IMG/VR virus record: IMGVR_UViG_3300050120_000230
Coordinates: 248,001-312,000 of that record
Length of the DNA stretch: 64,000 nucleotides
Strand: one strand, 5' to 3'
Position numbers and translations under genes: made by a program. Shown one piece after another: positions 12,095 through 56,609 of this stretch (within the stretch, counting starts at the first letter, position 1; the number at the start of each line of letters is the position of its first letter). Below the pieces are notes generated by a model. That model searched no databases and was not told the origin of the DNA. It worked only from the letters and a program-made list of their open reading frames with translations.

Positions 12095-12128
12095 AATGAC
12101 ACTATATATCCAGAAAACTAGGCAATAG

Positions 12129-12452
12129 TCAATCTACAGCGGCGAGCCTCTCCGCAAAATGCATTTTGAAAATCACCGCATCGGTTTCTCTCGGGAAAGA
12201 AATGGCTACGTAGGAATGCGCGTTTCCCCACTCTTTCTTTGCATGAGTAGTCACCAATGTGAAATCATGCTCCATGTTATAGGTCCGCAAGAATTCACGG
12301 AGGCCCGACCACTCTTCATCCATCATTCGACTCAGCGAAACCACTTCGTAGACCGTCATAGGTCTAGTAAAGATGGTCCCTTGTTTTGTGGAATTCAGCT
12401 CATCGATGGTTAATGTGGCAGAAAACAACCTGAACTCAGTCTTCAACTTCAA
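12129..12452 (-). CDS. DAxxFK[LM]xW-family protein
   Basis: DAVIFKMHF. Confidence 0.65.
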   Translation of the reverse strand: MKLKTEFRLFSATLTIDELNSTKQGTIFTRPMTVYEVVSLSRMMDEEWSGLREFLRTYNMEHDFTLVTTHAKKEWGNAHSYVAISFPRETDAVIFKMHFAERLAAVD

Positions 12453-12897
12453 GACCTTTCATGACGGACAATTGCCCCTTCTCTGGGATCGGGCCGTCGA
12501 TGTCGAGCACTGTCACCACCATGGCTTGGCTCGTCTTATCGGCACGGTTGCGTCCTCGGATCACGATGACGGCTTTTTCTTCCTGAGAGATAATCACATC
12601 GTGGTCATCGTTTGGATCATATCGCCCGGCCGCCATAGCGCGGATGCGATCACGGACAGATTGTAGGTCCACGCCGTCGATGCGTTCAAGCCATCGGACA
12701 ATGGCATGGTCACTCACCATCAGGTCTTCAGGTGTGGTTTCGCTTTGTCGAATGGCGCCGTTCACAGCTTCGAACCGCGCAGCCATCATCTTTTGATCGC
12801 GAATCAAGCCGCGATTGGCCAAGGTCAACTCTTCCCTGATCCGATACAATTCGTTCAATGGAAGTCCGGCCAAGATCAAGGGATTGTTCTGCGACAT
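12436..12897 (-). CDS. Hypothetical protein
   Basis: VSDHAIVRWLER motif; downstream of TTGACG early promoter. Confidence 0.6.
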   Translation of the reverse strand: MSQNNPLILAGLPLNELYRIREELTLANRGLIRDQKMMAARFEAVNGAIRQSETTPEDLMVSDHAIVRWLERIDGVDLQSVRDRIRAMAAGRYDPNDDHDVIISQEEKAVIVIRGRNRADKTSQAMVVTVLDIDGPIPEKGQLSVMKGLEVED

Positions 12898-12937
12898 ACC
12901 TCCAATGTGGAGTGTCGGGTAGTTTTCGTCAACCAGA

Positions 12938-13543
12938 TTAGCGAATCTGTTCCACGCCGATGATATTCACCGGAGAGTTTTCGCGGATGCGAATTTCTTT
13001 TTCGTCTTCATAGTCAGGCATTATGTTCATCGCCAGCGTCGTGGTCCAATCCACTACCGACATGTTGACCTCGGCGGCGATCCGCCATTTGACGTTGCCT
13101 TCACTGAAATCGCCCCAGTGAGCATCAGCAGCATTCTTGTCCCATGACCAATAGATGCCGGGATGACGGGCATCTGGTTTCCAATCGGCCGGAGCGGTGA
13201 TGACACGATAAAGGGTGGCGTTGCCAGACGCGTCGAACAGGTGAGCGAAATTCCCCCAAGCATCCCAGAGACGTTCTTCGACCCAACCCTTAAACCAATG
13301 TGTGAACTCAGGCGTGTTGGTGTCTACCGCGCTCGTGTCTGATCCATCGAAATTATCGTGATTGATTTCGATTTCGTGCTCACGAGCGTAGGCGTATTTC
13401 ACGCTCGCGGCGCCACCAGCCTCGGTGCTCCAATCCATGTCGTTGTAGACCAGATTGAAAACGGCCTTGGCATCGACCAAGTGATTCGGCGTGGGAAGTT
13501 CCTCGGCCAACAAATTCTCGACGAGGTTGATGAAATCACGCAT
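12938..13543 (-). CDS. Putative ADP-ribosyltransferase-fold protein with capsid-targeting-like N-terminus
   Basis: MRDFINLVE; LYRVI...GIYWSWD...EKEIRI (R-S-E-like); CTAAATA 4 nt upstream. Confidence 0.55.
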   Translation of the reverse strand: MRDFINLVENLLAEELPTPNHLVDAKAVFNLVYNDMDWSTEAGGAASVKYAYAREHEIEINHDNFDGSDTSAVDTNTPEFTHWFKGWVEERLWDAWGNFAHLFDASGNATLYRVITAPADWKPDARHPGIYWSWDKNAADAHWGDFSEGNVKWRIAAEVNMSVVDWTTTLAMNIMPDYEDEKEIRIRENSPVNIIGVEQIR

Positions 13544-13550
13544 CCGATAT

Positions 13551-14189
13551 TTAGGCGGTGGCAGGTTCCATATGACCGTGCATCGCTTCGATCAATTCGA
13601 TCTGCGTCCGCAGCATGTGCTTGATGTTCTCGTAGGCGAGCGCCTGATGCGGGAAATTGCGGCGTGCGGCCTTCAGCATCGGGAAGAACAGCTTCTCCGC
13701 TTCGCTGATGTAGGACTTCTGCTTGGCCAACGTGAAAACGCCCACCATGGATTGCAGATTGTGGATGCGGTCGCAGCCCTTGGCGATGCTGGCGATCTCA
13801 TCCTCGCCCATGGCGGCGAACAGCTTCGCTTCGTCCTTCTTGGCTCCGCGCCATTCCTTGGTCATGTTCTCGACCGCGCGACTGACACGTTCGGCGAAAG
13901 CTAGATCGGTGGCGAACAGCGACCGAACCTCCGCATCAGTGATGTGGTAATCCTCGCGCACGTCGTGCAGGAAAATCGTGGTGATAATCTCTTCACGGTA
14001 GCGCAGGTTGGGGAGCGTCAGCGCATACAGCGCGATGCTGATCTGGTGATCGAACTCCGGCGTGAAGCCGTCTTTGCGCGTGCCGGTGTGGTGCTTCGCG
14101 GCAAACTCCATCGCCACGAGGGCGTGGTAGTATCCGGCGCCTGCGAGATACTGTCGGAGCGTGAGTGCTTTCTTCTTGAATTTGTCCAT
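13551..14189 (-). CDS. RelA/SpoT-type HD domain hydrolase (Mesh1/SAH-like)
   Basis: FAAKHHTGTRKDG.TP...H, LHDVRED, V..MTK, KGCDRIHNL. Confidence 0.8.
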   Translation of the reverse strand: MDKFKKKALTLRQYLAGAGYYHALVAMEFAAKHHTGTRKDGFTPEFDHQISIALYALTLPNLRYREEIITTIFLHDVREDYHITDAEVRSLFATDLAFAERVSRAVENMTKEWRGAKKDEAKLFAAMGEDEIASIAKGCDRIHNLQSMVGVFTLAKQKSYISEAEKLFFPMLKAARRNFPHQALAYENIKHMLRTQIELIEAMHGHMEPATA

Positions 14190-14229
14190 ACCTACAGTGT
14201 GCCTGCAAGTAACCGGTTGGTCAACCAAA

Positions 14230-14529
14230 TCAGGAGACGGCCAGTTTCAAGGCGATCACGTCGTTCTTGTAGAGTTCGAAGTCACCGTAGAACGCGATGC
14301 TGTCTTTGCCACGAGGCAACCATCGAACCTGCCAAGTCCAAGTCGTGTGCGTGATCGGGTCGTCGGGCAAGAAACGCATCAAGTTCTTCGTGAACTCGTC
14401 GCCGTAGTATCGTTCTTTATTCGCCCACAGCCGGATGCCCAAAATGGTGATAGGCATCCCGACGCTACTCATGAACGGGTCCACATAATAGTGGATTTCG
14501 TCGAGCGTTCGCCGATCCAAGAAATCCAT
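14230..14529 (-). CDS. GD..F..D-x-x-x-K[LM] subfamily protein
   Basis: FYGDFELYKNDVIALKL. Confidence 0.6.
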   Translation of the reverse strand: MDFLDRRTLDEIHYYVDPFMSSVGMPITILGIRLWANKERYYGDEFTKNLMRFLPDDPITHTTWTWQVRWLPRGKDSIAFYGDFELYKNDVIALKLAVS

Positions 14530-15068
14530 CAGCGCGACTTGAGGCGCTCGACGATCTTGTAGTGGGTCTGGACGATTCGGCTCAACGTTTCATCATCGGT
14601 CAGCTTGCGGAACGAACGAGCATGGTAATCCTCATCTGGGATCACCGCTGTCAGAAACGCCATGATGTCGGCGGGTGTGTCAGGGTGTGAGGCGATCACG
14701 TTGAAGCGATCCACTGCCAATTGTTCCCCAAGATGGAACACAGCCGCGCAGGAGGACAGGTCCACAATGACCTTGTCCATCTCCGACCAGTAAATGCTTT
14801 CGGGCTGTTCGTCTTCGGTCGATAGGCCGCGTTTGTTCAGCAGTTCGACCAGCAGATCGCTGTGCCTCAGTTCATCGAAGGCGGTAGCCCGGAGCACGGT
14901 CTCGGCCGCGATATTTCCACCGGCCCATTGCTCGATGGCCGAGAGATTGTCGGCGTAGCCGCTGTATTCGGTCTTCTGAAGTTTTTGCAGCCAGCGCGCC
15001 ATGCGCTCTTCGTCAGCGAGGTTTCGTTCCCACCAGCGGAGGGCGAAGTCTGTGTCGAACTTTTCCAT
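14529..15068 (-). CDS. Ferritin-like diiron protein
   Basis: Repeated E...DExxH pattern: DELRH, GEQLA, DEDYH. Confidence 0.75.
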   Translation of the reverse strand: MEKFDTDFALRWWERNLADEERMARWLQKLQKTEYSGYADNLSAIEQWAGGNIAAETVLRATAFDELRHSDLLVELLNKRGLSTEDEQPESIYWSEMDKVIVDLSSCAAVFHLGEQLAVDRFNVIASHPDTPADIMAFLTAVIPDEDYHARSFRKLTDDETLSRIVQTHYKIVERLKSR

Positions 15069-21070: not shown

Positions 21071-21153
21071 GCCACGGTGGCTCAGCGGCGACAGCGCGTC
21101 ATTCGTAATGACGAATACAAACACCGGGGGTTCGAGTCCCTCCCGTGGCACCA
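21071..21153 (+). tRNA. tRNA-Thr(CGT), enlarged variable loop, encoded CCA
   Basis: Acceptor GCCACGG/CCGTGGC; anticodon stem CGTCA/TGACG, loop TT-CGT-AA; T-loop TTCGAGT. Confidence 0.85.
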
Positions 21154-39940: not shown

Positions 39941-41422
39941 GTGGGACGTAAGCAGCTAACGAAGACCTTCGATCATCGCACCGAAGAGTCCTCGATCTAT
40001 CAGAATTGGGAGACTAGCGGTGCGTTCGCCCCTCGCGGCGACGGTCCTGCTTATTTTCTCCCAATGCCACCGCCGAATATCACCGGCATCTTGCACATGG
40101 GGCACGCACTTTTCGCGACCCTGCAAGACATCTCGACCCGCTATCATCGCATGAAAGGGGACGCCACGTTGTGGCTGCCGGGAAGCGACCATGCGGGCCT
40201 CGCAACGCAAGACAAGCTCGATGCTCTCATGATCGAGCAAGGGCTCGACCCTAACGGTCCAGAGTTCGATGCGTTCGCGGAAACCTACAAGCTCAGCCTG
40301 CAAGGCACGATCATGAAACAGCTTCGAAGCTGTGGTGCATCGTGTGATTGGTCCCGCGAGACGTTCACGCTCGACGACCGCTACTCCAACGCCGTCCAGA
40401 CGGCTTGGAAAAAGTGCAACGACGCTGGCCTGACCTACGCCAAGGAAGGTGAACTCTTCATCAACATGGAGCCATTGGCCAAGCGTCTGCTTGACCATCT
40501 CGATGCTGGTGATCTGAAGATCATTCCGGCCGGTGGAGAAGGAACTCTGCGGAACTTCCTGACCAAGATCGAGCCATGGAACATCAGTCGTAAAATCCGC
40601 TGGGGTCACAAAATCCCCGGATGGTTCCACGACGGGCACAACATGGTCTTCGATACATGGTTCTCGTCGGCACTCTGGCCGTTCGCCACGCTTGGTTGGC
40701 CAGACGACACCGAAGACATGCAGCGATTCTACCCGGCGGCCATGATCGAAACGGCTGACGACATTCTGTTCTTCTGGTGTGCGCGGATGCTCATGATGGG
40801 CCTCCTGCTCACCGACCGTCTGCCGTTCGACACGATCTTCCTGCACGGTTTGATCCGTGACAAGCACGGAAAGAAGATGTCGAAATCGGCTGGCAACGGC
40901 ATCGACCCACTCGACATCATCGAACGTTACGGCGCCGACAGTATGCGGTTTGCCTTGGCCGAAGCTGCCACGCCCGGTCAAGACATGAGGATGTGGGACG
41001 ACAAGTTCCAAGCAGGCAAAGCTCTGCGGACGAAACTGTGGAACGCCGCTCGATATTCCTTGGCCCATTACGAACGCCTAGGAAGCCCGCAGGAGCCCTT
41101 TAAGCCCTCGAAGCACTACGACGACGTTGAGATGGAAAAGAGGCTCACAGCGGCTCACAGGGACGCTACAGAGGCATTTGAAGAGCTACGTTACCACGAG
41201 GCTGCTCATGGGATCAGAAAGTTCATCTTCGAAGACTTGTGTGGCTGGTATATCGAGGCCACGAAGAGCCGTCTATACGACGAAGATGACCAAGATGCTC
41301 TTCAAACCCTGATGTGGGCTCTGGATGGCACGTTGAAGATGCTTCATCCGATCATGCCGTTCATCACTGAGCGCATTCGTGAGGCATATTCGGGCACGCC
41401 GCTCATCACAGATGCGTGGTAG
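39941..41422 (+). CDS. valS: Minimal valyl-tRNA synthetase (no CP1 editing domain, no C-terminal coiled coil)
   Basis: PPPNITGILHMGH, GSDHAGLATQ, WNISR..RWGH.IP, VFDTWFSSALWPF, KMSKS, YG.D..RF, LHP.MPFITE. Confidence 0.95.
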   Translation: MGRKQLTKTFDHRTEESSIYQNWETSGAFAPRGDGPAYFLPMPPPNITGILHMGHALFATLQDISTRYHRMKGDATLWLPGSDHAGLATQDKLDALMIEQGLDPNGPEFDAFAETYKLSLQGTIMKQLRSCGASCDWSRETFTLDDRYSNAVQTAWKKCNDAGLTYAKEGELFINMEPLAKRLLDHLDAGDLKIIPAGGEGTLRNFLTKIEPWNISRKIRWGHKIPGWFHDGHNMVFDTWFSSALWPFATLGWPDDTEDMQRFYPAAMIETADDILFFWCARMLMMGLLLTDRLPFDTIFLHGLIRDKHGKKMSKSAGNGIDPLDIIERYGADSMRFALAEAATPGQDMRMWDDKFQAGKALRTKLWNAARYSLAHYERLGSPQEPFKPSKHYDDVEMEKRLTAAHRDATEAFEELRYHEAAHGIRKFIFEDLCGWYIEATKSRLYDEDDQDALQTLMWALDGTLKMLHPIMPFITERIREAYSGTPLITDAW

Positions 41423-49072: not shown

Positions 49073-49148
49073 GGAGCGGTAGCTCAGTGGTAGCAGCGCC
49101 GGTTTGTCAGGCCGAAGGTCGCGGGTTCGATCCCCGTCCGCTTCGCCA
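49073..49148 (+). tRNA. tRNA-Asp(GTC), encoded CCA
   Basis: GGAGCGG/CCGCTTC; loop TT-GTC-AG. Confidence 0.9.
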
Positions 49149-49173
49149 TTTCATTTGAAGCTAGGTGATTTGA

Positions 49174-49245
49174 GCGGCTGTAGCTCAGTGGTAGAGCATC
49201 TCGTTGCCAACGAGAATGTCGCGGGTTCGAATCCCGCCAGCCGCT
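49174..49245 (+). tRNA. tRNA-Gly(GCC), no encoded CCA, flanked by a 13-bp inverted repeat
   Basis: GCGGCTG/CAGCCGC, U73; TCTCG-TTGCCAA-CGAGA. Confidence 0.9.
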
Positions 49246-49281
49246 CAAATCACCTAGAAGGCAATCCTCCGAGACCTTTAC

Positions 49282-49355
49282 GGAGCGTTCGACTATGGGT
49301 AAGTCATCACCCTTTCAAGGTGAGGTAGCGGGTTCGAGCCCCGCACGCTCTACCA
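49282..49355 (+). tRNA. tRNA-Glu(TTC), encoded CCA
   Basis: TCACC-CTTTCAA-GGTGA. Confidence 0.9.
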
Positions 49356-49357
49356 AT

Positions 49358-49431
49358 GGACCGTTCGTCTATGGGTAGGACACCACGTTCTCAGCGTGGG
49401 GGAAGGGGTTCAAGCCCCCTACGGTCTACCA
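49358..49431 (+). tRNA. tRNA-Glu(CTC), encoded CCA
   Basis: CCACG-TTCTCAG-CGTGG. Confidence 0.9.
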
Positions 49432-49468
49432 ATCTCAGCTTCGGTTGAGACGATCTTTGAAACTATAT

Positions 49469-49540
49469 GCGGGCGTAACTCAGCGGTAGAGTGTCAGCCT
49501 TCCAAGCTGTTCGTCGCAGGTTCGATCCCTGTCGCCCGCT
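49469..49540 (+). tRNA. tRNA-Gly(TCC), no encoded CCA
   Basis: GCGGGCG/CGCCCGC, U73; TCAGC-CTTCCAA-GCTGT. Confidence 0.9.
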
Positions 49541-49549
49541 CACTTTCAT

Positions 49550-49621
49550 GCAATCTTCGTCTATCGGCTAAGACGCCTTGCTTTCCGGCAGGAAAGAGCA
49601 GTTCGATTCTGCTAGGTTGCT
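49550..49621 (+). tRNA. Atypical tRNA-Gly-like gene with non-canonical (6- or 8-nt) anticodon loop
   Basis: GCAATCT/AGGTTGC plus U73; T arm AGCAG-TTCGATT-CTGCT; CTTGC-TTTCCG-GCAGG. Confidence 0.6.
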
Positions 49622-51237: not shown

Positions 51238-51662
51238 CCTCCTATCAACTGCTCAAAGAGTATAAGGGCCTAGAGCCCTTCGCTGTATTCCACCCGATCA
51301 TGTGGACGAAGACTGACGACGATCTGTGCATAGGGGATCATGAACGCCGTATTCGTGAACTGTTGATGTGGCTCAATGACCGAAACGCACCATATCAAAT
51401 CATCATCAAAGAAGAACTGAAACCCGTAGAAAATTTCGACGGATACAACGGCTATCAATCCTACCGGCATTATCACAACAATTACGAACTCGTCGTCGAA
51501 GACGATGACGCCGTAGTATTGATGAAACTTTTCTTCGAAGATTTCGTGCCATTCCCGATTACACCCGAACCTGTTGTGGTTGTTGAAACTTCCACTCCTA
51601 TTACGGAGCCACCGCCAGAAAATTTCTTCGCCTTCTGGCTGAAGAGATTGGGATTTGGTTGA
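51234..51662 (+). CDS. DAxxFK[LM]xW-family protein (divergent)
   Basis: DDAVVLMKLFF. Confidence 0.6.
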   Translation: MTSYQLLKEYKGLEPFAVFHPIMWTKTDDDLCIGDHERRIRELLMWLNDRNAPYQIIIKEELKPVENFDGYNGYQSYRHYHNNYELVVEDDDAVVLMKLFFEDFVPFPITPEPVVVVETSTPITEPPPENFFAFWLKRLGFG

Positions 51663-51712
51663 CGAAAACTGGTTCGATGATAGGTTGTGTGTAGACTTCA
51701 AAGGAGTGGCAC

Positions 51713-51961
51713 ATGGCGCGTTATCAGAACTCAGAAAATTGCGCGCTGACCGGTGTTAGCGGCGCGGAACTGATCCGCCGCTCCGGCGACTGCCAACCCA
51801 TCGGCGAAATCTACAAGGGCCAAGACGGCTGGAAATCCTACGCGGGCTACGAGCTTCCGGCCGAGTTCCGGGGAACGTGGGACCTGCGGGTCGATGCGAT
51901 CTTCGCCATCAACGAGGCCGACCGTCTGCAAAATCGGGGGACCTACTATGGCGCGATCTGA
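51713..51961 (+). CDS. Hypothetical protein
   Basis: Early promoter at 51659; SD AAGGAG. Confidence 0.7.
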   Translation: MARYQNSENCALTGVSGAELIRRSGDCQPIGEIYKGQDGWKSYAGYELPAEFRGTWDLRVDAIFAINEADRLQNRGTYYGAI

Positions 51962-52190
51962 CCTGACCCCCGACTATGTCGATTTCGGCGACCACGTTCG
52001 CAACGCCGGACTTGGTCAGTGCCAGTACGTTTCGCGCTACGTTGGCGGGCGCCATGGCTACCCGGATTTTGGCGAGGGTCTGCGCTTCCAAGGCGATCCC
52101 ATCGACTATCATTTCCTCGAAATCCACAAGGATGACGTGGACACTTTCATCGAACGCGTGAAAGAGCATCTGCATCGGCGCGGGTTCTGA
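51948..52190 (+). CDS. Hypothetical protein
   Basis: Co-directional run. Confidence 0.65.
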
Positions 52191-52198
52191 GAAACAAC

Positions 52199-54136
52199 AT
52201 GACCGAACCCTACGATCACGCGACCGTCGAGCAGAAATGGCGCCAGTTCTGGGCGAAATCACGCCTGTTCGATCAGGCGCTCGCAAGCCGGACGAAGACG
52301 AAATACTACGTGCTGGAAATGTTCCCGTATCCCTCGGGTCGCATCCACATGGGGCATGTCCGCAACTACGCCATCGGCGACGTGCTGGCGCGCTACAAGC
52401 GCAGCCAAGGCTTCAACGTGCTTCATCCCATGGGCTGGGACGGCTTCGGCCTGCCCGCTGAGAACGCGGCCATTGAAAATGGCACGCACCCTGCGGACTG
52501 GACGTTCGCCAACATCGCCGCCATGCGTGAGCAATTGAAGCGTCTGGGCTTGTCCGTGGACTGGACGCGCGAAATCGCGACTTGTGACCCGGCGTACTAC
52601 GGTGAGCAGCAAAAACTCTTCCTGCGGCTGCTGTCCGCTGGTCTCGCCTATCGCAAAGAAAGCGAAGTCAACTGGGACACCGTGGACAACACTGTGCTGG
52701 CCAACGAACAGGTCATCGACGGTAAGGGCTGGCGCTCGGGTGCACCTGTCGAGAAGCGGATGCTGACCCAGTGGTTCTTCCGAATCACCAACTACGCCGA
52801 TGAACTGCTGGACGGTTTGAAGACCCTGTCGAACTGGCCGGAGAAGGTCAAGACGATGCAGCAAAACTGGATCGGCAAGGACGAAGACGGCAACACGATG
52901 CTGCGCGACTGGGGCGTGTCTCGGCAGCGGTATTGGGGTTGCCCGATCCCGGTGATCCATTGCACCGAGTGCGGCATCGTCCCGGCCGAAACGCCGGTGA
53001 TCCTGCCAAAAGATGTGGACTTCACAATCCCCGGCAACCCGCTGGCCAACCATCCGACGTGGAAACACGTCGCGTGCCCGACGTGCGGCGAGGATGCGAC
53101 GCGTGAGACCGACACCATGGACACGTTCGTGGACTCGTCGTGGTATTTCGCCCGCTTCGTCAGCGCCGACCCCGCGAACCCGATCTGCGATGCGGGCATC
53201 GATCATTGGATGCCGGTCGATCAATATGTCGGTGGTATCGAACACGCCATCCTGCATCTGCTGTATGCCCGGTTCTTCACCAAAGCGTTGCGCGACACGG
53301 GCTGTTGGCGAGTGGACGAACCATTCACCGGGCTGTTCACGCAAGGCATGGTCACGCACAAGACCTATCGAACCGTGATCGGCAAGGAATGGGTCTACCC
53401 GGAAGAAGTGACCCTCAACAGCGACGGCGTCACGGCCAAGATGACCGCCACCGGACTTCACGTCGAAATCGGCGCGGCCGAGAAGATGTCGAAGAGCAAG
53501 AAAAACGTCGTCAGTCCTGACGCGATCTTCGACAAGTATGGCGTCGATGCCGCCCGCCTGTTCGTGCTGTCAGACAGCCCGCCGGAGCGCGATTTCGTGT
53601 GGTCCGAAGCTGGTGTCAAAGGCGCCGCAGGATTCATCCAGAAAGTCTGGAACGTCATCAACGAACCCGATGGCGTGCCGGACCAAACCAACATCATCCT
53701 GACCCACCAGACGATCAAGGACGTGACCGATTGTCTGGACAACTTCAAGTTCAACAAAGCGGTCAGTCTCCTGCATGTTTTCGTAGCCGGGATCACCGGT
53801 AAGGCCGACGTGGCGACCAAGAAAATTCTGATCCAACTGATCTCGCCGATGACGCCACATCTGGCCGAAGAGGCATGGCACGATCTCAAGGGTTGCTACT
53901 CCATCGTGGATGAACCGTGGCCGACGTTCAATCCCGCTCTGTTGGTGCCGCCGAACGTCACCATGCCGGTGTCGGTGAACGGCAAGCGCCGCAGCGAGAT
54001 CGTTGTCCCGCTGGATCACGCCGACGACTTGGTCATCGCCATTGCGACGGCTGATCCCGAAGTCATGCGCTTCATCGGCGATGGTGTGAAGAAAGCCATC
54101 GTCGTCAAGAACCGCATCGTAAATCTGGTGGTGTGA
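52199..54136 (+). CDS. leuS: Leucyl-tRNA synthetase lacking the CP1 editing domain
   Basis: [89 protein letters not shown]. Confidence 0.97.
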
Positions 54137-54417
54137 TGATCTACGAACTTCGCGCCACAGGTAAGCGCATTCGTTTCTTGGATGTGTCGATTGGCAACCC
54201 ATTCGCCAAGCATGGCGCGATCTGGGTTCGCACGAGCTACGACGCGGCGACCAAGGTCGCGTCCAGCGGTCACCATGCGTCCTGCTGCAACTTCGTCATC
54301 GATCCAGAGGACGAGTGGGTTGAAGTCGTTAACGTCGTGATCGATGGCGATGAAATTGGCCCGAAGCATGGACCGACGTTGAGCCCCGAACAAATCGAAA
54401 CGTTCCCCGCACTATGA
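54133..54417 (+). CDS. Hypothetical protein
   Basis: Coupled to the leuS stop. Confidence 0.6.
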
Positions 54418-54755
54418 CGCGCGTCTGGAAGCCAGTTCCGATCCAATTCCAAGATACGCTGTTTCGGATGGATTTGATAATTCGGAATAACACTGATCCG
54501 TCGTTGGATGGCATGTTCGTATACCATTTCGGTGAAGTGAAAGTGGTCATTCGACCGATCTATCACCATCTGCATTATATCGCCGGTCGCAGCCAATGGC
54601 ATCCGCAACGGATAAGTTTTCCCGACTGGCAAGTACGGTGGGAATGGACAGATTCGCCCACCAAACATCGATCCAGCGTGCGATATCTGGCGCGCAGCGA
54701 ATCGCTCATGATTCGTGACCTGACGATGGTCAAACTGTCGGCGGAATTCGAATGA
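54414..54755 (+). CDS. RDxTxxK[LM] subfamily protein
   Basis: IRDLTMVKL. Confidence 0.6.
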   Translation: MTRVWKPVPIQFQDTLFRMDLIIRNNTDPSLDGMFVYHFGEVKVVIRPIYHHLHYIAGRSQWHPQRISFPDWQVRWEWTDSPTKHRSSVRYLARSESLMIRDLTMVKLSAEFE

Positions 54756-55231
54756 GACGTTCTCGCCTCAAACAGGCAGCGCCGGGCCTCTACCCTGAGA
54801 ACACACCGGGGTATAAAAAGCCGCCGCCGGAGCCCAAGATCATCCGTGGTGTGCCCGCTGAGTTCGCCATCAAGGTTGTGGATCACATTCTTCGTTGGGG
54901 TGATCCAACCGGCAAGACCTATGCGGCCGGGCGAGCCGACTATGGCGGTCAGGAAGAACGACACGAGCCGATCCGGTTCGCCAATCTAGGAGGCGTACTG
55001 TTCGATTGCTACATGGTGCCGAGCTTCGGAATGCACCATCGCGTCTATCTCTCTGGTCCAACGTGGTCTTGCACGCTGTTCGTCGAGCACTGGATGATGG
55101 GCGGGGCGGATTGCCATATGATCTTTGGCAAATATTTTGCAGTGGCGGACTACGAGATGAGGAACAAGCGGGGCTGGCTCATGGATATGACCATCGCCCG
55201 TATGATGGTAGCGGACTGGGCTCGTGGTTGA
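54752..55231 (+). CDS. RDMTIARM subfamily protein
   Basis: KYFAVADY...GWLMDMTIARM. Confidence 0.65.
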   Translation: MRRSRLKQAAPGLYPENTPGYKKPPPEPKIIRGVPAEFAIKVVDHILRWGDPTGKTYAAGRADYGGQEERHEPIRFANLGGVLFDCYMVPSFGMHHRVYLSGPTWSCTLFVEHWMMGGADCHMIFGKYFAVADYEMRNKRGWLMDMTIARMMVADWARG

Positions 55232-55625
55232 TCGCCCACGCCTTTTCACAATAGCCGGTGTGCCCGTCTCTCTTGTGTTCGATTTCGCAGTGGGCGGGTA
55301 TTGTATCGGGCTGCCTATCAATCACGAAAGAGTAGACCGCCAAAAACTTATGGTGGGGAACCCTCAGAAAACAGTTGTTACTCAGTTCAAGGTCGGGAAC
55401 ATGAAGTTCATCACCTTTTCCGAGTCACCATACAACGAAGATCATCGCCTTCACCTCTCTACAAGTCACTGGACTTGTGAAGTAAAAATGCGACAAGTGG
55501 CGGGAAACGGATTCGTATTCTGGGACAAATACTACGCAGTTCACGACTATACCGTTACCGACGAACAAGGATGGTTGCGCGATATGACTATCGCACGTAT
55601 GCTATCTGACGAATGGATGGAATAG
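55224..55625 (+). CDS. RDMTIARM subfamily protein
   Basis: KYYAVHDY...GWLRDMTIARM. Confidence 0.65.
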   Translation: MVDRPRLFTIAGVPVSLVFDFAVGGYCIGLPINHERVDRQKLMVGNPQKTVVTQFKVGNMKFITFSESPYNEDHRLHLSTSHWTCEVKMRQVAGNGFVFWDKYYAVHDYTVTDEQGWLRDMTIARMLSDEWME

Positions 55626-55627
55626 GA

Positions 55628-56221
55628 ATGGCCCTCGACCGTAACCAAGACGTGACAAACGACGACATCTTGGCGATGCTCGGTGGCGAACTGCTGCCCG
55701 CTGATATTCATGAACGCCGTGCCGCGAAGCAGCGCCAGAAAGCCATGGGCCGCCGCCAACGCGAGATCGAAGCAGAGCTTGCAAAATTCTCGACCGGCAA
55801 GCTTCTGAAAATGCGGAATCACAATTTCTCCGGCGATGTCGTGTTTCTTGACGGTGACGAATATCGTCGGGGACGCAACGCAGACTATCGGTCTGAGGCT
55901 GCCACGCAAGCCGAATACGATGAGCAGCTTGCCCGCCGCAACGCGCTCTATGCCGTGCTATCTCGTCGTCCACACGTCCCCAACAAGATCGAGGGACACA
56001 ACGCTCGCAAGCAGGCAGCGACAGAGCATCACGGACCCAAGAAGACCGGTGGCCGCCGATCAAAGTTTTCCACCGAACCGGCGAAGAAAAGTGCCCGGCG
56101 ACTGGAACAGGATGAACGGAAGTTTGACCGATGGTTCGCGGCCGAATGCAAGACAAATCCGAGCATGGCGAACAGTCGCAATTTCTGGCGGCGGATGTTC
56201 AAGCTTGGCTACTATGGCTGA
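55628..56221 (+). CDS. HHGP-family paralog 1
   Basis: VTNDDILAMLGGELLP...HVPNK...ATEHHGP. Confidence 0.7.
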   Translation: MALDRNQDVTNDDILAMLGGELLPADIHERRAAKQRQKAMGRRQREIEAELAKFSTGKLLKMRNHNFSGDVVFLDGDEYRRGRNADYRSEAATQAEYDEQLARRNALYAVLSRRPHVPNKIEGHNARKQAATEHHGPKKTGGRRSKFSTEPAKKSARRLEQDERKFDRWFAAECKTNPSMANSRNFWRRMFKLGYYG

Positions 56222-56609
56222 ATATCATCCGCTCGACAAAGAGCGTCCCACCACAGATGTGACGAACGAAGAGTTGATGCAAATCCTCTCGGGCGAAATC
56301 TTGCCTCGGGATGTTCACTGGCAGCGTTGGCAAAAAGAACGTGTCAAGAGGATGAAGGCTGCGCGCCTCGATTTCACGGGTCATCTGAAAACGTTTCATA
56401 CTCGCGAACTGATGCAAATGCATCGCGACGGTAGCATTCAGGGGTGGGCCAATTTCGGCATTCTCGCCGAGGTGAGTTATAGCGAAAAAATCGAAACCAT
56501 GGTGCGAGCGGAACTCGCGACTCGTGAGCACATTCCGAACAAAACCGAAGCCAAGGCACTGCGGAGGGCCGCCGCCACGAAGCATCATGGCCCTAGGAAG
56601 CGCGCATGA
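56214..56609 (+). CDS. HHGP-family paralog 2
   Basis: VTNEELMQILSGEILP...HIPNK...ATKHHGP. Confidence 0.7.
   Translation: MAEYHPLDKERPTTDVTNEELMQILSGEILPRDVHWQRWQKERVKRMKAARLDFTGHLKTFHTRELMQMHRDGSIQGWANFGILAEVSYSEKIETMVRAELATREHIPNKTEAKALRRAAATKHHGPRKRA

What the first reader, a model, noticed from the sequence alone, without database searches (positions are those of the whole stretch)
52199..54136. LeuRS with CP1 replaced by a 7-aa linker ([16 protein letters not shown])
Seen at 52865-52912: the two motifs that flank the ~190-aa editing domain in bacterial LeuRS are joined directly; the rest of the enzyme is intact. Established: Mycoplasma mobile LeuRS naturally lacks CP1 and mistranslates. 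Inference: independent, clean CP1 loss in both class Ia synthetases of one phage implies selection, for example for genome economy, resistance to CP1-targeting inhibitors (benzoxaboroles), or deliberate mistranslation (norvaline, Ile, Met at Leu codons).
Basis: partly seen in the sequence, partly recalled or inferred. Interest (0 to 1): 0.75.

Follow-up and report, generated by a model that had tools for sequence, protein, structure and literature searches.

The report
Phage leucyl-tRNA synthetase lacking its proofreading domain
A giant phage from a peat metagenome carries a complete leucine-charging enzyme whose roughly 190-residue proofreading domain is replaced by a seven-residue loop, which makes it a natural test case for whether a virus needs translational proofreading.

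Summary
Window 52199-54136 (+) encodes a 645-aa bacterial-type LeuRS. It scores 756 bits against TIGR00396 (cut-off 548). The catalytic motifs and all the tRNA-binding domains are present. About 190 residues of CP1 are replaced by K-D-E-D-G-N-T, between NWIG and MLRDW (nt 52865-52912).

It is not an artefact or a pseudogene:
- A second assembly of the run gives the same sequence.
- Two syntenic contigs (570 kb and 82 kb) share the same deletion.
- dN/dS is 0.18-0.23.
- The AlphaFold model is confident (pLDDT 94.7).

The three proteins form one clade, sister to Caulobacterales LeuRS, which have CP1. The loss therefore followed capture from an alphaproteobacterium.

The 415-kb record (72% complete) has no free-standing CP1, YbaK or tRNA_SAD domain. 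It encodes all five tRNA-Leu isoacceptors and at least seven synthetases. The second class Ia enzyme is a ValRS, not an IleRS. It belongs to a much larger CP1-less family that includes cultured Stenotrophomonas jumbo phages.

CP1 loss is recurrent. At least 14 further CP1-less LeuRS clusters were found, representing 7-12 independent losses, in phages, reduced genomes and free-living bacteria.

Most likely this is an active, editing-free LeuRS that serves phage translation. Why CP1 was lost is not settled.

The parts
52199..54136 (+). Gene for a 645-aa bacterial-type leucyl-tRNA synthetase without the CP1 editing domain (P0001). The stop TGA overlaps the GTG start of the next ORF (GTGA).
   Evidence: ORF list and translation. 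TIGR00396 756 bits against a cut-off of 548. PDB LeuRS E 1e-187. AlphaFold model pLDDT 94.7, TM 0.86-0.87 to E. coli LeuRS.
52877..52897 (+). Linker K227-D-E-D-G-N-T233, which stands where about 190 residues of CP1 sit in cellular LeuRS. The flanks NWIG (52865-52876) and MLRDW (52898-52912) are the conserved strands that lead into and out of CP1.
   Evidence: Alignments A1 and A3. Only M. mobile LeuRS (3ziu) among solved LeuRS aligns across this point in one stretch, 72 query residues against 74 chain residues. Model pLDDT is about 94-95 for residues 221-240.
52346..52357 (+). HIGH signature (H50-M-G-H53) of the class I catalytic site.
   Evidence: Translation. H50, G52 and H53 are invariant in 33 sequences and at least 90% conserved in 97.
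52667..52783 (+). CP1 hairpin / ZN1-equivalent region (residues about 157-195). It is retained undivided, as in bacterial LeuRS, where CP1 is inserted after it.
   Evidence: Aligned without gaps to N. gonorrhoeae LeuRS 157-195. The statement on bacterial topology comes from PMC4138327.
52961..53086 (+). Second insertion, with the cysteine pairs C255-x-x-C258 and C293-x-x-C296.
   Evidence: Translation. C255, C258, C293 and C296 are invariant in alignment A3.
53357..53482 (+). Leucine-specific domain (about 387-428). It is retained here, whereas M. mobile LeuRS replaces it with GKDG.
   Evidence: Alignment to N. gonorrhoeae LeuRS and A1. The M. mobile fact comes from PMC3643597.
53483..53497 (+). 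KMSKS signature (residues 429-433).
   Evidence: Translation. Invariant in A3 and at least 90% conserved in A5.
53702..54133 (+). Anticodon-binding domain (Pfam PF08264, residues 502-609) and C-terminal tRNA-binding domain (to residue 645).
   Evidence: Pfam hit E 4e-15. TIGR00396 aligned to model position 842 of 843. PDB chain aligned to its last residue, 877.
39941..41422 (+). Companion gene: a 493-aa valyl-tRNA synthetase lacking CP1, the CP1 hairpin, a further insertion and the C-terminal coiled coil (P0121).
   Evidence: NF004349 ValRS 520 bits, below its 704 cut-off. T. thermophilus ValRS 1gax aligned in three stretches, ending at residue 705 of 862. More than 100 short relatives.
49073..49541 (+). 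tRNA cluster (Asp, Gly x2, Glu x2), part of the phage's set of 52 tRNA genes. The five tRNA-Leu genes lie outside the window, at genome 160991-161472 (- strand).
   Evidence: ARAGORN and Rfam RF00005.

Best explanation
The gene encodes a working leucyl-tRNA synthetase of a myovirus-like giant phage. It can activate leucine and charge tRNA-Leu but cannot hydrolyse mischarged tRNA-Leu, because the CP1 editing domain has been excised and the two strands that led into it are closed by a short acidic DG-turn loop.

The gene was captured from an alphaproteobacterium (the LeuRS lineage nearest Caulobacterales) whose enzyme had CP1. The domain was lost once, in the common ancestor of at least three related phages. 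The shortened enzyme has been kept under purifying selection ever since.

Together with the phage's own five tRNA-Leu isoacceptors and at least six other phage synthetases, it probably sustains or raises the supply of Leu-tRNA-Leu during infection.

The most likely reason for the loss is that proofreading is dispensable there. The physiological target of LeuRS editing is norvaline, which harms cells only during prolonged exposure. An infection is short, and the host's own CP1-bearing LeuRS remains in the cell.

Shown: the architecture, the single origin, the selection on the remainder, and the absence of a substitute editing module in the held sequence. Inferred: catalytic activity, lack of editing, the role in infection, and the reason for the loss.
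For: - Architecture and intact motifs.
- Confident fold with a closed junction: pLDDT 94.7, pTM 0.91, TM 0.86-0.87 to E. coli LeuRS in the aminoacylation state, and TMt 0.89 to M. mobile LeuRS.
- The same deletion, with linkers KDEDGNT, QDEDGNT and IDDDGVT, occurs in two syntenic contigs of 570 kb and 82 kb.
- dN/dS is 0.18-0.23 at dS 0.9-1.2.
- The three proteins form a clade with 100% support, sister to Caulobacterales LeuRS at 96%. All 80 nearest bacterial loci keep CP1.
- No PF13603 at E<=10, and no hit for a purpose-built CP1 HMM run with --max (best E 0.7, control 294 bits). No YbaK and no tRNA_SAD domain.
- The phage encodes tRNA-Leu for all five anticodons, each with A73 and a long variable arm.
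- The record is a phage: baseplate wedge at 803 bits, plus tail fibres.
- Experimental precedent: the M. mobile nonapeptide can replace CP1 in E. coli LeuRS and still permits aminoacylation (PMC3643597).
- Norvaline, not Ile, is the editing target, and its fitness cost appears in prolonged stationary or microaerobic culture (PMC4932531).
- CP1 loss recurs 7-12 times among 97 LeuRS representatives, so it is an easily tolerated change.
Against: - No biochemical or expression data exist for this protein.
- The record is only 72% complete by CheckV, so an editing module could lie in the missing part.
- The stem leading to the three phage proteins is long (0.91 changes per site), so altered specificity cannot be excluded.
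- The sample is peat. Norvaline accumulated most under low-oxygen (microaerobic) growth in E. coli (PMC4932531). If peat hosts see such conditions (my inference), proofreading would matter more there, which argues against simple dispensability.
- Editing in trans by the host enzyme is thought to be inefficient for class I synthetases (my knowledge, not tested here).
Confidence: 0.65

Rival explanations
1. CP1 loss is adaptive because it makes the phage enzyme insensitive to something that acts on or through CP1 or the host LeuRS. Candidates are a host defence, a competitor's inhibitor, or a phage-made inhibitor of the host enzyme. The phage copy would then keep leucylation running when the host copy is blocked.
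For: Resistant second copies of synthetases are a known strategy. One example is the AgnB2 LeuRS of Agrobacterium radiobacter K84, which appears among the structural matches (5ah5); its self-immunity role against agrocin 84 is my knowledge. Several CP1-less LeuRS sit in bacterial genomes that also carry canonical class Ia enzymes, one of them 2 kb from an 847-aa class Ia synthetase. The phage's other synthetases (Ser, Asp) also match targets of natural inhibitors (my knowledge).
Against: No natural inhibitor that acts through the LeuRS editing site is known to me. Benzoxaboroles are synthetic. Agrocin 84 acts at the synthetic site, which is retained here. No candidate inhibitor gene was identified next to the gene.
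Confidence: 0.12
2. The phage benefits from lowered fidelity: mischarged tRNA-Leu and tRNA-Val diversify or destabilise proteins in a useful way (deliberate mistranslation).
For: The only two phage synthetases that would normally edit have both lost the domain, and no editing module of any kind was found. M. mobile, which has the same LeuRS architecture, misincorporates at Leu codons at up to about 1 in 200 (PMC3553970).
Against: The same pattern is expected from relaxed selection alone. The host enzyme stays present and would dilute any effect. In E. coli the loss of LeuRS editing yields only norvaline substitution, and that lowers fitness. The phage's own virion proteins would be hit as well.
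Confidence: 0.08
3. The protein has left translation and uses the LeuRS scaffold for another job, such as supplying Leu-tRNA for a tRNA-dependent modification, sensing leucine, or binding RNA.
For: Phage enzymes that use aminoacyl-tRNA for DNA hypermodification have been reported (title and abstract of PMC13219725, seen). The stem branch is long.
Against: All catalytic and tRNA-binding elements are conserved, including the C-terminal domain. The score lies above the equivalog cut-off. A complete matching tRNA-Leu set is encoded.
Confidence: 0.05
4. The deletion is an assembly artefact or the gene is decaying.
For: There is only one holding run, probably the source sample.
Against: Logan's separate assembly is identical. 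The same deletion occurs in two other assemblies from other samples. The frame is open, dN/dS is about 0.2, and LeuRS is among the best-conserved proteins of the syntenic block.
Confidence: 0.02

Closest known systems
Mycoplasma mobile LeuRS (PDB 3ZIU), the one described natural LeuRS without CP1
   Same: It is a bacterial-type LeuRS in which CP1 is replaced by a short peptide at the same insertion point. The linkers resemble each other: KEEIDGKIT against KDEDGNT, each with a basic residue, an acidic pair, a DG turn and a final T. It is the only solved LeuRS that aligns across the junction in one stretch. Structural match TMt 0.89, rmsd 2.9.
   Different: The phage linker is two residues shorter. 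The phage enzyme keeps the leucine-specific domain, which M. mobile replaces with GKDG. Sequence identity is only about 33-34%. The origin is separate (alphaproteobacterial). It is an extra copy in a virus, beside a host enzyme, and not the cell's only LeuRS.
Engineered E. coli LeuRS with CP1 deleted or replaced by the M. mobile nonapeptide (Tan et al. 2012, as cited in PMC3643597; Boniecki et al. 2008, PNAS 105:19223, details from memory)
   Same: The architecture is the same: a full proteobacterial LeuRS body with the leucine-specific and C-terminal domains, and a short loop in place of CP1. Such constructs still aminoacylate.
   Different: Those constructs were made in the laboratory. This one arose naturally and has been maintained over dS of about 1. 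Its kinetics and fidelity are unknown.
Canonical alphaproteobacterial LeuRS (Caulobacter, Brevundimonas, Phenylobacterium)
   Same: About 60-63% identity over aligned columns, and sister group in the tree. All domains other than CP1 correspond.
   Different: These enzymes are 857-865 aa long and carry CP1 (PF13603). The phage clade sits on a long stem and differs at 66 positions that are at least 93% conserved in the 30 bacterial sequences compared.
Minimal LeuRS-like genes of published huge phages (LR756501.1, 735 kb, 508 aa; LR745206.1, 635 kb, 422 aa)
   Same: They are phage-encoded and CP1 is absent.
   Different: Those are cut down much further: no leucine-specific domain and no C-terminal domain, and in the 422-aa form no second insertion either. 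The junctions differ. Identity is 40-46%. Whether they share an origin with this clade could not be resolved (AU test p 0.50).
CP1-less ValRS family of giant phages (including Stenotrophomonas phages RAS14 and CM1, WAX21612.1)
   Same: It is a class Ia synthetase without its editing domain, encoded by the same phage (window 39941-41422) and by its 570-kb relative.
   Different: It has a different specificity. The family is far larger and older (more than 100 clusters, down to about 41% identity), and the truncation is more radical.

Membership tests
Bacterial-type leucyl-tRNA synthetase (TIGR00396 leuS_bact) | Whole-protein score above the curated equivalog cut-off | tested here: met
   756.2 bits against a cut-off of 548.4, even without CP1.
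Bacterial-type leucyl-tRNA synthetase (TIGR00396 leuS_bact) | Class I signatures HIGH and KMSKS | tested here: met
   HMGH at 50-53 and KMSKS at 429-433.
Bacterial-type leucyl-tRNA synthetase (TIGR00396 leuS_bact) | CP1 editing domain (PF13603) inserted after the undivided CP1 hairpin / ZN1 | tested here: not met
   No PF13603 in the protein or in the genome. 191 alignment columns are missing. The insertion point itself is of the bacterial type: the hairpin is undivided and the flanks are NWIG / LRDW.
Bacterial-type leucyl-tRNA synthetase (TIGR00396 leuS_bact) | Anticodon-binding domain and C-terminal tRNA-binding domain | tested here: met
   PF08264 E 4e-15. Aligned to the last model and chain residue. 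pLDDT above 90 over residues 470-645.
Bacterial-type leucyl-tRNA synthetase (TIGR00396 leuS_bact) | Leucylation of tRNA-Leu | not testable with these tools
   Only indirect support: conserved active site, purifying selection, and cognate tRNA-Leu genes with A73.
Naturally CP1-less LeuRS (M. mobile type) | CP1 replaced by a peptide of about ten residues or fewer at the bacterial insertion point | tested here: met
   A seven-residue linker. A single-stretch alignment to 3ziu across the junction.
Naturally CP1-less LeuRS (M. mobile type) | Leucine-specific domain also replaced (GKDG in M. mobile) | tested here: not met
   A domain of about 40 residues is retained at 387-428.
Naturally CP1-less LeuRS (M. 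mobile type) | No post-transfer editing, with mischarging of tRNA-Leu | not testable with these tools
   Expected from the absence of the domain. Requires deacylation and misacylation assays.
Naturally CP1-less LeuRS (M. mobile type) | Common descent with the M. mobile enzyme | tested here: not met
   The phage clade is nested among alphaproteobacterial LeuRS. The CP1-less state needs 12 changes on the tree of 97 representatives, and at least 7 are forced by well-supported branches.
Split or trans-editing LeuRS system (free-standing CP1) | A separate gene for a CP1-like domain in the same genome | tested here: not met
   PF13603 gives nothing at E<=10. A custom CP1 HMM against all six frames gives a best E of 0.7, with a positive control at 294 bits. 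Caveat: the record is 72% complete.

The most novel reading that the evidence does not exclude
Giant phages build a translation apparatus that is free of proofreading as a rule. Whenever they capture a class Ia synthetase (LeuRS, ValRS), the editing domain is removed, because speed, gene size or independence from host quality control matters more to a virus than accuracy. Infected cells would then translate phage messages with measurably lower fidelity at Leu and Val codons. This would be an undescribed general property of viral translation, and it could be tested in the cultured Stenotrophomonas phages RAS14 and CM1.
Probability: 0.2. Interest if true: 0.8.

Novelty: new member of a known kind. 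Interest (0 to 1): 0.55.

Why it matters
Editing by LeuRS and ValRS is regarded as nearly universal, and M. mobile is the textbook exception for LeuRS.

Here a virus carries editing-free versions of both enzymes, together with its own tRNAs. The same architecture turns up repeatedly in other giant phages, in a 400-kb reduced genome and as extra copies in free-living bacteria. None of this was found in the searchable literature.

This gives a natural series of independent CP1 deletions with differing linkers for structure-function work. It also gives a concrete way to ask whether translational fidelity is under selection in viruses. The CP1-less ValRS family occurs in phages that can be grown in the laboratory, which makes the question experimentally accessible.

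For annotation, such genes are currently named 'class I tRNA ligase family protein' or simply LeuRS/ValRS, with no note that editing is absent.

Tried and rejected
- Megablast of the gene against GenBank phages: no match.
- Scans of IMG/VR contigs with the protein and with an alignment: one short unrelated fragment, then nothing.
- First AlphaFold run, on 33 closely related sequences: unusable (pLDDT 53.5). It was replaced by a run on 97 diverse representatives.
The alignment was rebuilt without them, and those proteins were not folded.
- An alignment of 148 rows was too large for folding.
- A third homology search, starting from the 422-aa huge-phage LeuRS to take a census of short LeuRS, could not be made because the database was switched off.
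- Look-up of P0156: not on record.
- Whether the CP1 loss in this clade is independent of that in the 735-kb and 635-kb phages could not be decided. Both are extremely long branches, and the AU test does not reject a single clade (p 0.50). Only the different junctions and domain content argue for independence.
- Alternative genetic code: rejected. Stop codon use is ordinary (TGA 243, TAA 131, TAG 95) and 85% of the record is coding under table 11, despite a CTA-anticodon tRNA.
- Pseudogene and misassembly: rejected.
- Benzoxaborole resistance as a driver: set aside, because these are synthetic compounds (my knowledge).
- No complex prediction was run, since no protein-protein claim is made.
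Full report
**1. The observation**

The window lies at 248001-312000 of a 415,409-base IMG/VR virus record, which is linear and 72% complete by CheckV. ORF 52199..54136 on the + strand gives 645 residues.

The protein scores 756 bits against NCBIfam TIGR00396 (bacterial LeuRS, cut-off 548), but in two stretches; the second is residues 234-645 on model positions 410-842. Against solved structures, N. gonorrhoeae LeuRS aligns 1-229 to 2-229. The conserved post-CP1 motif then resumes near chain residue 418 and runs to 877. Against 30 alphaproteobacterial LeuRS, 191 columns are missing between residues 229 and 234. Pfam finds the catalytic and anticodon-binding domains but no PF13603 editing domain.

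The following are all present:
- HMGH (50-53) and KMSKS (429-433).
- The undivided CP1 hairpin.
- Both cysteine pairs of the second insertion.
- A leucine-specific domain.
- The C-terminal domain.

**2. Not an artefact, not a pseudogene**

One public run, from a peat metagenome, holds the sequence. Logan's separate assembly of that run covers 51500-55000 in a single contig with no differences at depth 19.6.

A search of 5.8 billion proteins found two close relatives without the editing domain. One has 678 aa at 75% identity, on a 569,661-base contig of NCBI assembly GCA_040384025.1. The other has 633 aa at 72% identity, on an 82-kb ENA contig. Both have the deletion at the same place, with linkers QDEDGNT and IDDDGVT. 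Both contigs are dense with small ORFs of unknown function. About twenty genes around LeuRS are collinear with the window, at 30-80% identity, and LeuRS is among the best conserved.

Pairwise dN/dS among the three genes is 0.18-0.23, at dS 0.9-1.2. The shortened gene has therefore been kept functional for a long time.

**3. What the element is**

The record is a tailed phage. It has a baseplate wedge protein (803 bits), tail fibres and a virion structural protein.

It encodes 52 tRNA genes. These include all five tRNA-Leu isoacceptors, each with discriminator A73 and a long variable arm; four of the five also encode the 3' CCA.

It also encodes at least seven synthetases:
- LeuRS (this gene).
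- A 493-aa ValRS at window 39941-41422.
- CysRS, SerRS and a full-length AspRS.
- A Glu/Gln-type enzyme and a Trp/Tyr-type enzyme.

Only LeuRS and ValRS would normally carry an editing domain, and both lack it. AspRS and SerRS are full length, so the phage does not trim synthetases indiscriminately.

**4. No substitute editing module**

PF13603 gives no hit in the record even at E<=10, while the same search hits all 14 control genomes. I built a profile from the CP1 segments of 30 alphaproteobacterial LeuRS and ran it with all filters off against every six-frame segment of at least 40 residues. The best hit was E 0.7 at 7.8 bits. A Sphingomonas LeuRS control scored 294 bits. YbaK-type (PF04073) and tRNA_SAD (PF07973) domains are absent too. 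The caveat is the estimated 28% of the genome that is missing.

**5. Origin**

The 80 best matches among 185,579 species genomes are all Alphaproteobacteria, apart from a few differently or unspecifically labelled metagenome bins. All of them span 2.48-2.67 kb, so all contain CP1.

In a maximum-likelihood tree the three CP1-less proteins form a clade with 100% support on a long stem (0.91 changes per site). That clade is sister to Caulobacterales LeuRS at 96% support, nested inside Alphaproteobacteria (quick search, SH-aLRT only). The simplest reading is capture of a normal LeuRS from an alphaproteobacterium, followed by a single loss of CP1 in the phage lineage.

A relative of the phage's ValRS lies on a 581,572-base, ORFan-rich contig in the assembly of the isolate Sphingomonas sp. 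3-13AW (WP_422513522.1). In that assembly the host LeuRS (841-aa frame, with CP1) is on another contig, and the large contig has no LeuRS. An alphaproteobacterial host is thus plausible but not shown.

**6. Structure**

A first model built from 33 close relatives was poor (pLDDT 53.5). With 97 diverse representatives the model reached pLDDT 94.7 and pTM 0.91, with about 94-95 over residues 221-240.

Foldseek places it on E. coli LeuRS in the aminoacylation conformation: TM 0.86-0.87 by query length and 0.65-0.67 by target length, the difference being CP1. It also places it on M. mobile LeuRS, at TM 0.89 by target length and rmsd 2.9 Å.

Among solved LeuRS, only the M. mobile enzyme aligns across the junction in one stretch, 72 query residues against 74. 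The phage loop is therefore two residues shorter than the M. mobile nonapeptide KEEIDGKIT (PMC3643597). The two loops resemble each other in make-up: a basic residue, an acidic pair, a DG turn and a final threonine. I read this as convergence.

**7. Likely function**

Experimental precedent says this architecture works: the M. mobile nonapeptide can replace CP1 in E. coli LeuRS and still permits aminoacylation (PMC3643597). [quoted passage not shown] In human cytoplasmic LeuRS that hairpin is needed for amino acid activation and aminoacylation (same paper). The hairpin is intact here.

Without CP1 there can be no post-transfer editing. In M. mobile this goes with misincorporation at Leu codons of up to about 1 in 200 (PMC3553970). 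In E. coli the physiological target of LeuRS editing is norvaline, Ile is not misincorporated even without editing, and the cost appears during prolonged stationary or microaerobic growth (PMC4932531).

I therefore think the phage enzyme is an active, editing-free LeuRS. It would supply Leu-tRNA-Leu for the burst of phage protein synthesis. CP1 would have been lost because its benefit is small during a short infection in a cell that still holds the host's editing-competent LeuRS. Activity, the lack of editing and the reason for the loss are inferences (confidence 0.65).

**8. Wider pattern**

The CP1-less ValRS is not a private feature. More than 100 clusters of 410-550 residues, down to about 41% identity, lack the domain. 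Many sit on contigs of 340-580 kb, including the 570-kb relative. ValRS with CP1 appear only further down the list, at or below 42% identity. The cultured Stenotrophomonas jumbo phages RAS14 and CM1 carry one, annotated valyl-tRNA synthetase. Compared with T. thermophilus ValRS, the enzyme also lacks the CP1 hairpin, a further insertion and the C-terminal coiled coil.

Two published huge phages carry LeuRS-like genes that are even more reduced. LR756501.1 (735 kb) has a 508-aa form without CP1, leucine-specific domain or C-terminal domain. LR745206.1 (635 kb) has a 422-aa form that also lacks the second insertion. LR745206.1 has four class Ia-like genes, three of them short. In none of the three phage records searched does PF13603 reach its cut-off.

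A search of 1.84 billion cluster representatives found, among the best 150, at least 14 further LeuRS in which CP1 is replaced by a short loop of varying sequence, or by none. On a tree of 97 representatives, built without the CP1 columns, the CP1-less state needs 12 changes, and at least 7 are forced by well-supported branches.

The six contexts I inspected were not phage-like:
- Ordinary bacterial neighbourhoods, with sigma factors, dnaK-dnaJ or cdaA-glmM genes.
- One copy 2 kb from an 847-aa class Ia synthetase.
- One on a 400,845-base contig with groEL, gyrB, dnaN and secA, which looks like a reduced genome.

CP1 loss in bacterial-type LeuRS is therefore recurrent and occurs in three settings: reduced genomes, extra copies in free-living bacteria, and giant phages.

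**9. Comparison and novelty**

The gene works like, and looks like, the M. mobile type of LeuRS, but it is not its relative. It keeps the leucine-specific domain, and it is an accessory viral copy. It meets the sequence definition of bacterial LeuRS except for the editing domain.

Five full-text searches found no paper describing CP1-less LeuRS or ValRS in phages. The huge-phage paper reports synthetases but says nothing about domains (PMC7162821). I rate it a new member of a known kind. The broader pattern, editing-free class Ia synthetases as a habit of giant phages, appears undescribed and is the more interesting lead.

**10.

Both editing-type synthetases of the phage lack CP1, no trans factor was found, and the remainder is under selection. 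However:
- The partner enzyme is a ValRS with a much older and less clean truncation.
- Selection for the loss itself is not shown.
- Benzoxaborole resistance is implausible.
- Ile or Met misincorporation is unlikely from what is known of LeuRS.

Interest is 0.55. The case is solid and testable, of real interest to the synthetase and phage fields, but it is one instance of an architecture that turns out to be recurrent.

Noticed in passing
window 39941-41422 (+): A 493-aa ValRS without CP1, without the CP1 hairpin/zinc finger and without the C-terminal coiled coil. It belongs to a family of more than 100 clusters on contigs up to about 580 kb, including the cultured Stenotrophomonas phages RAS14 and CM1 and a 581-kb contig in the assembly of the isolate Sphingomonas sp. 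3-13AW. I know of no described natural ValRS that lacks its editing domain.
   Followed up: partly
window 21071-21153 (+); also genome 159692-159782, 160678-160762, 160845-160933, 167291-167375: Several tRNAs with class I anticodons are 83-91 nt long because of an enlarged variable region: Thr CGT, Lys TTT and CTT, Ile TAT, Gln TTG. The Ile(TAT) gene lies directly beside the tRNA-Leu cluster and has discriminator A. Rfam confirms the Thr gene as a tRNA (53.9 bits). The meaning of the insertions is unknown.
   Followed up: partly
window 49550-49621 (+): ARAGORN calls a tRNA with an abnormal two-base 'anticodon' at the end of the Asp-Gly-Glu-Glu-Gly cluster. Rfam does not confirm it at gathering score.
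   Followed up: partly
genome 373385-373472 (outside the window): An 88-nt class II tRNA with anticodon CTA and discriminator G, which looks like a serine-type amber suppressor. Stop codon use in the record is ordinary (TAG is 20% of stops) and coding density is 85% under table 11, so no recoding is evident.
   Followed up: partly
L009:7209-12175 (genome 319209-324178, outside the window): The phage carries a complete prkA - yhbH - spoVR gene trio (1177, 521 and 736 bits). This is a bacterial stress/sporulation-associated kinase module that I would not expect in a phage.
   Followed up: no
L014:1426-2013 (-) (genome about 378727-379314): A 195-aa ORF matches only the core of class II synthetases (PF00587, 33 bits). 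It lies between tRNA-His genes and may be a HisRS remnant or a HisZ-like protein.
   Followed up: no
window 54752-55231, 55224-55625, 55613-56221 and 55836-56609 (+): Just downstream of LeuRS there are two pairs of tandem paralogous small ORFs. One pair shares the motif GWL.DMTIARM. The other shares HIPNK...HHGP.K. Both pairs have counterparts in the 570-kb relative.
   Followed up: no
L111:8001-9950 and 12112-14655: On a 29-kb ENA metagenome contig, a 649-aa CP1-less LeuRS lies 2 kb from an 847-aa class Ia synthetase, separated by one ORF and a PIN-domain toxin-antitoxin pair. This suggests a paralogue pair with and without editing in one bacterium.
   Followed up: no
L109:8001-9731: A 576-aa CP1-less LeuRS on a 400,845-base high-coverage contig with groEL/ES, gyrB, dnaN, secA and ksgA. 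This is probably a reduced symbiont genome whose only LeuRS lacks editing, a second M. mobile-like case.
   Followed up: partly
window 52259-53461 (-): A 400-aa ORF runs antisense to LeuRS. It has 'homologues' antisense to the LeuRS genes of the relatives. This is the shadow frame expected in a GC-rich conserved gene, not a gene.
   Followed up: partly
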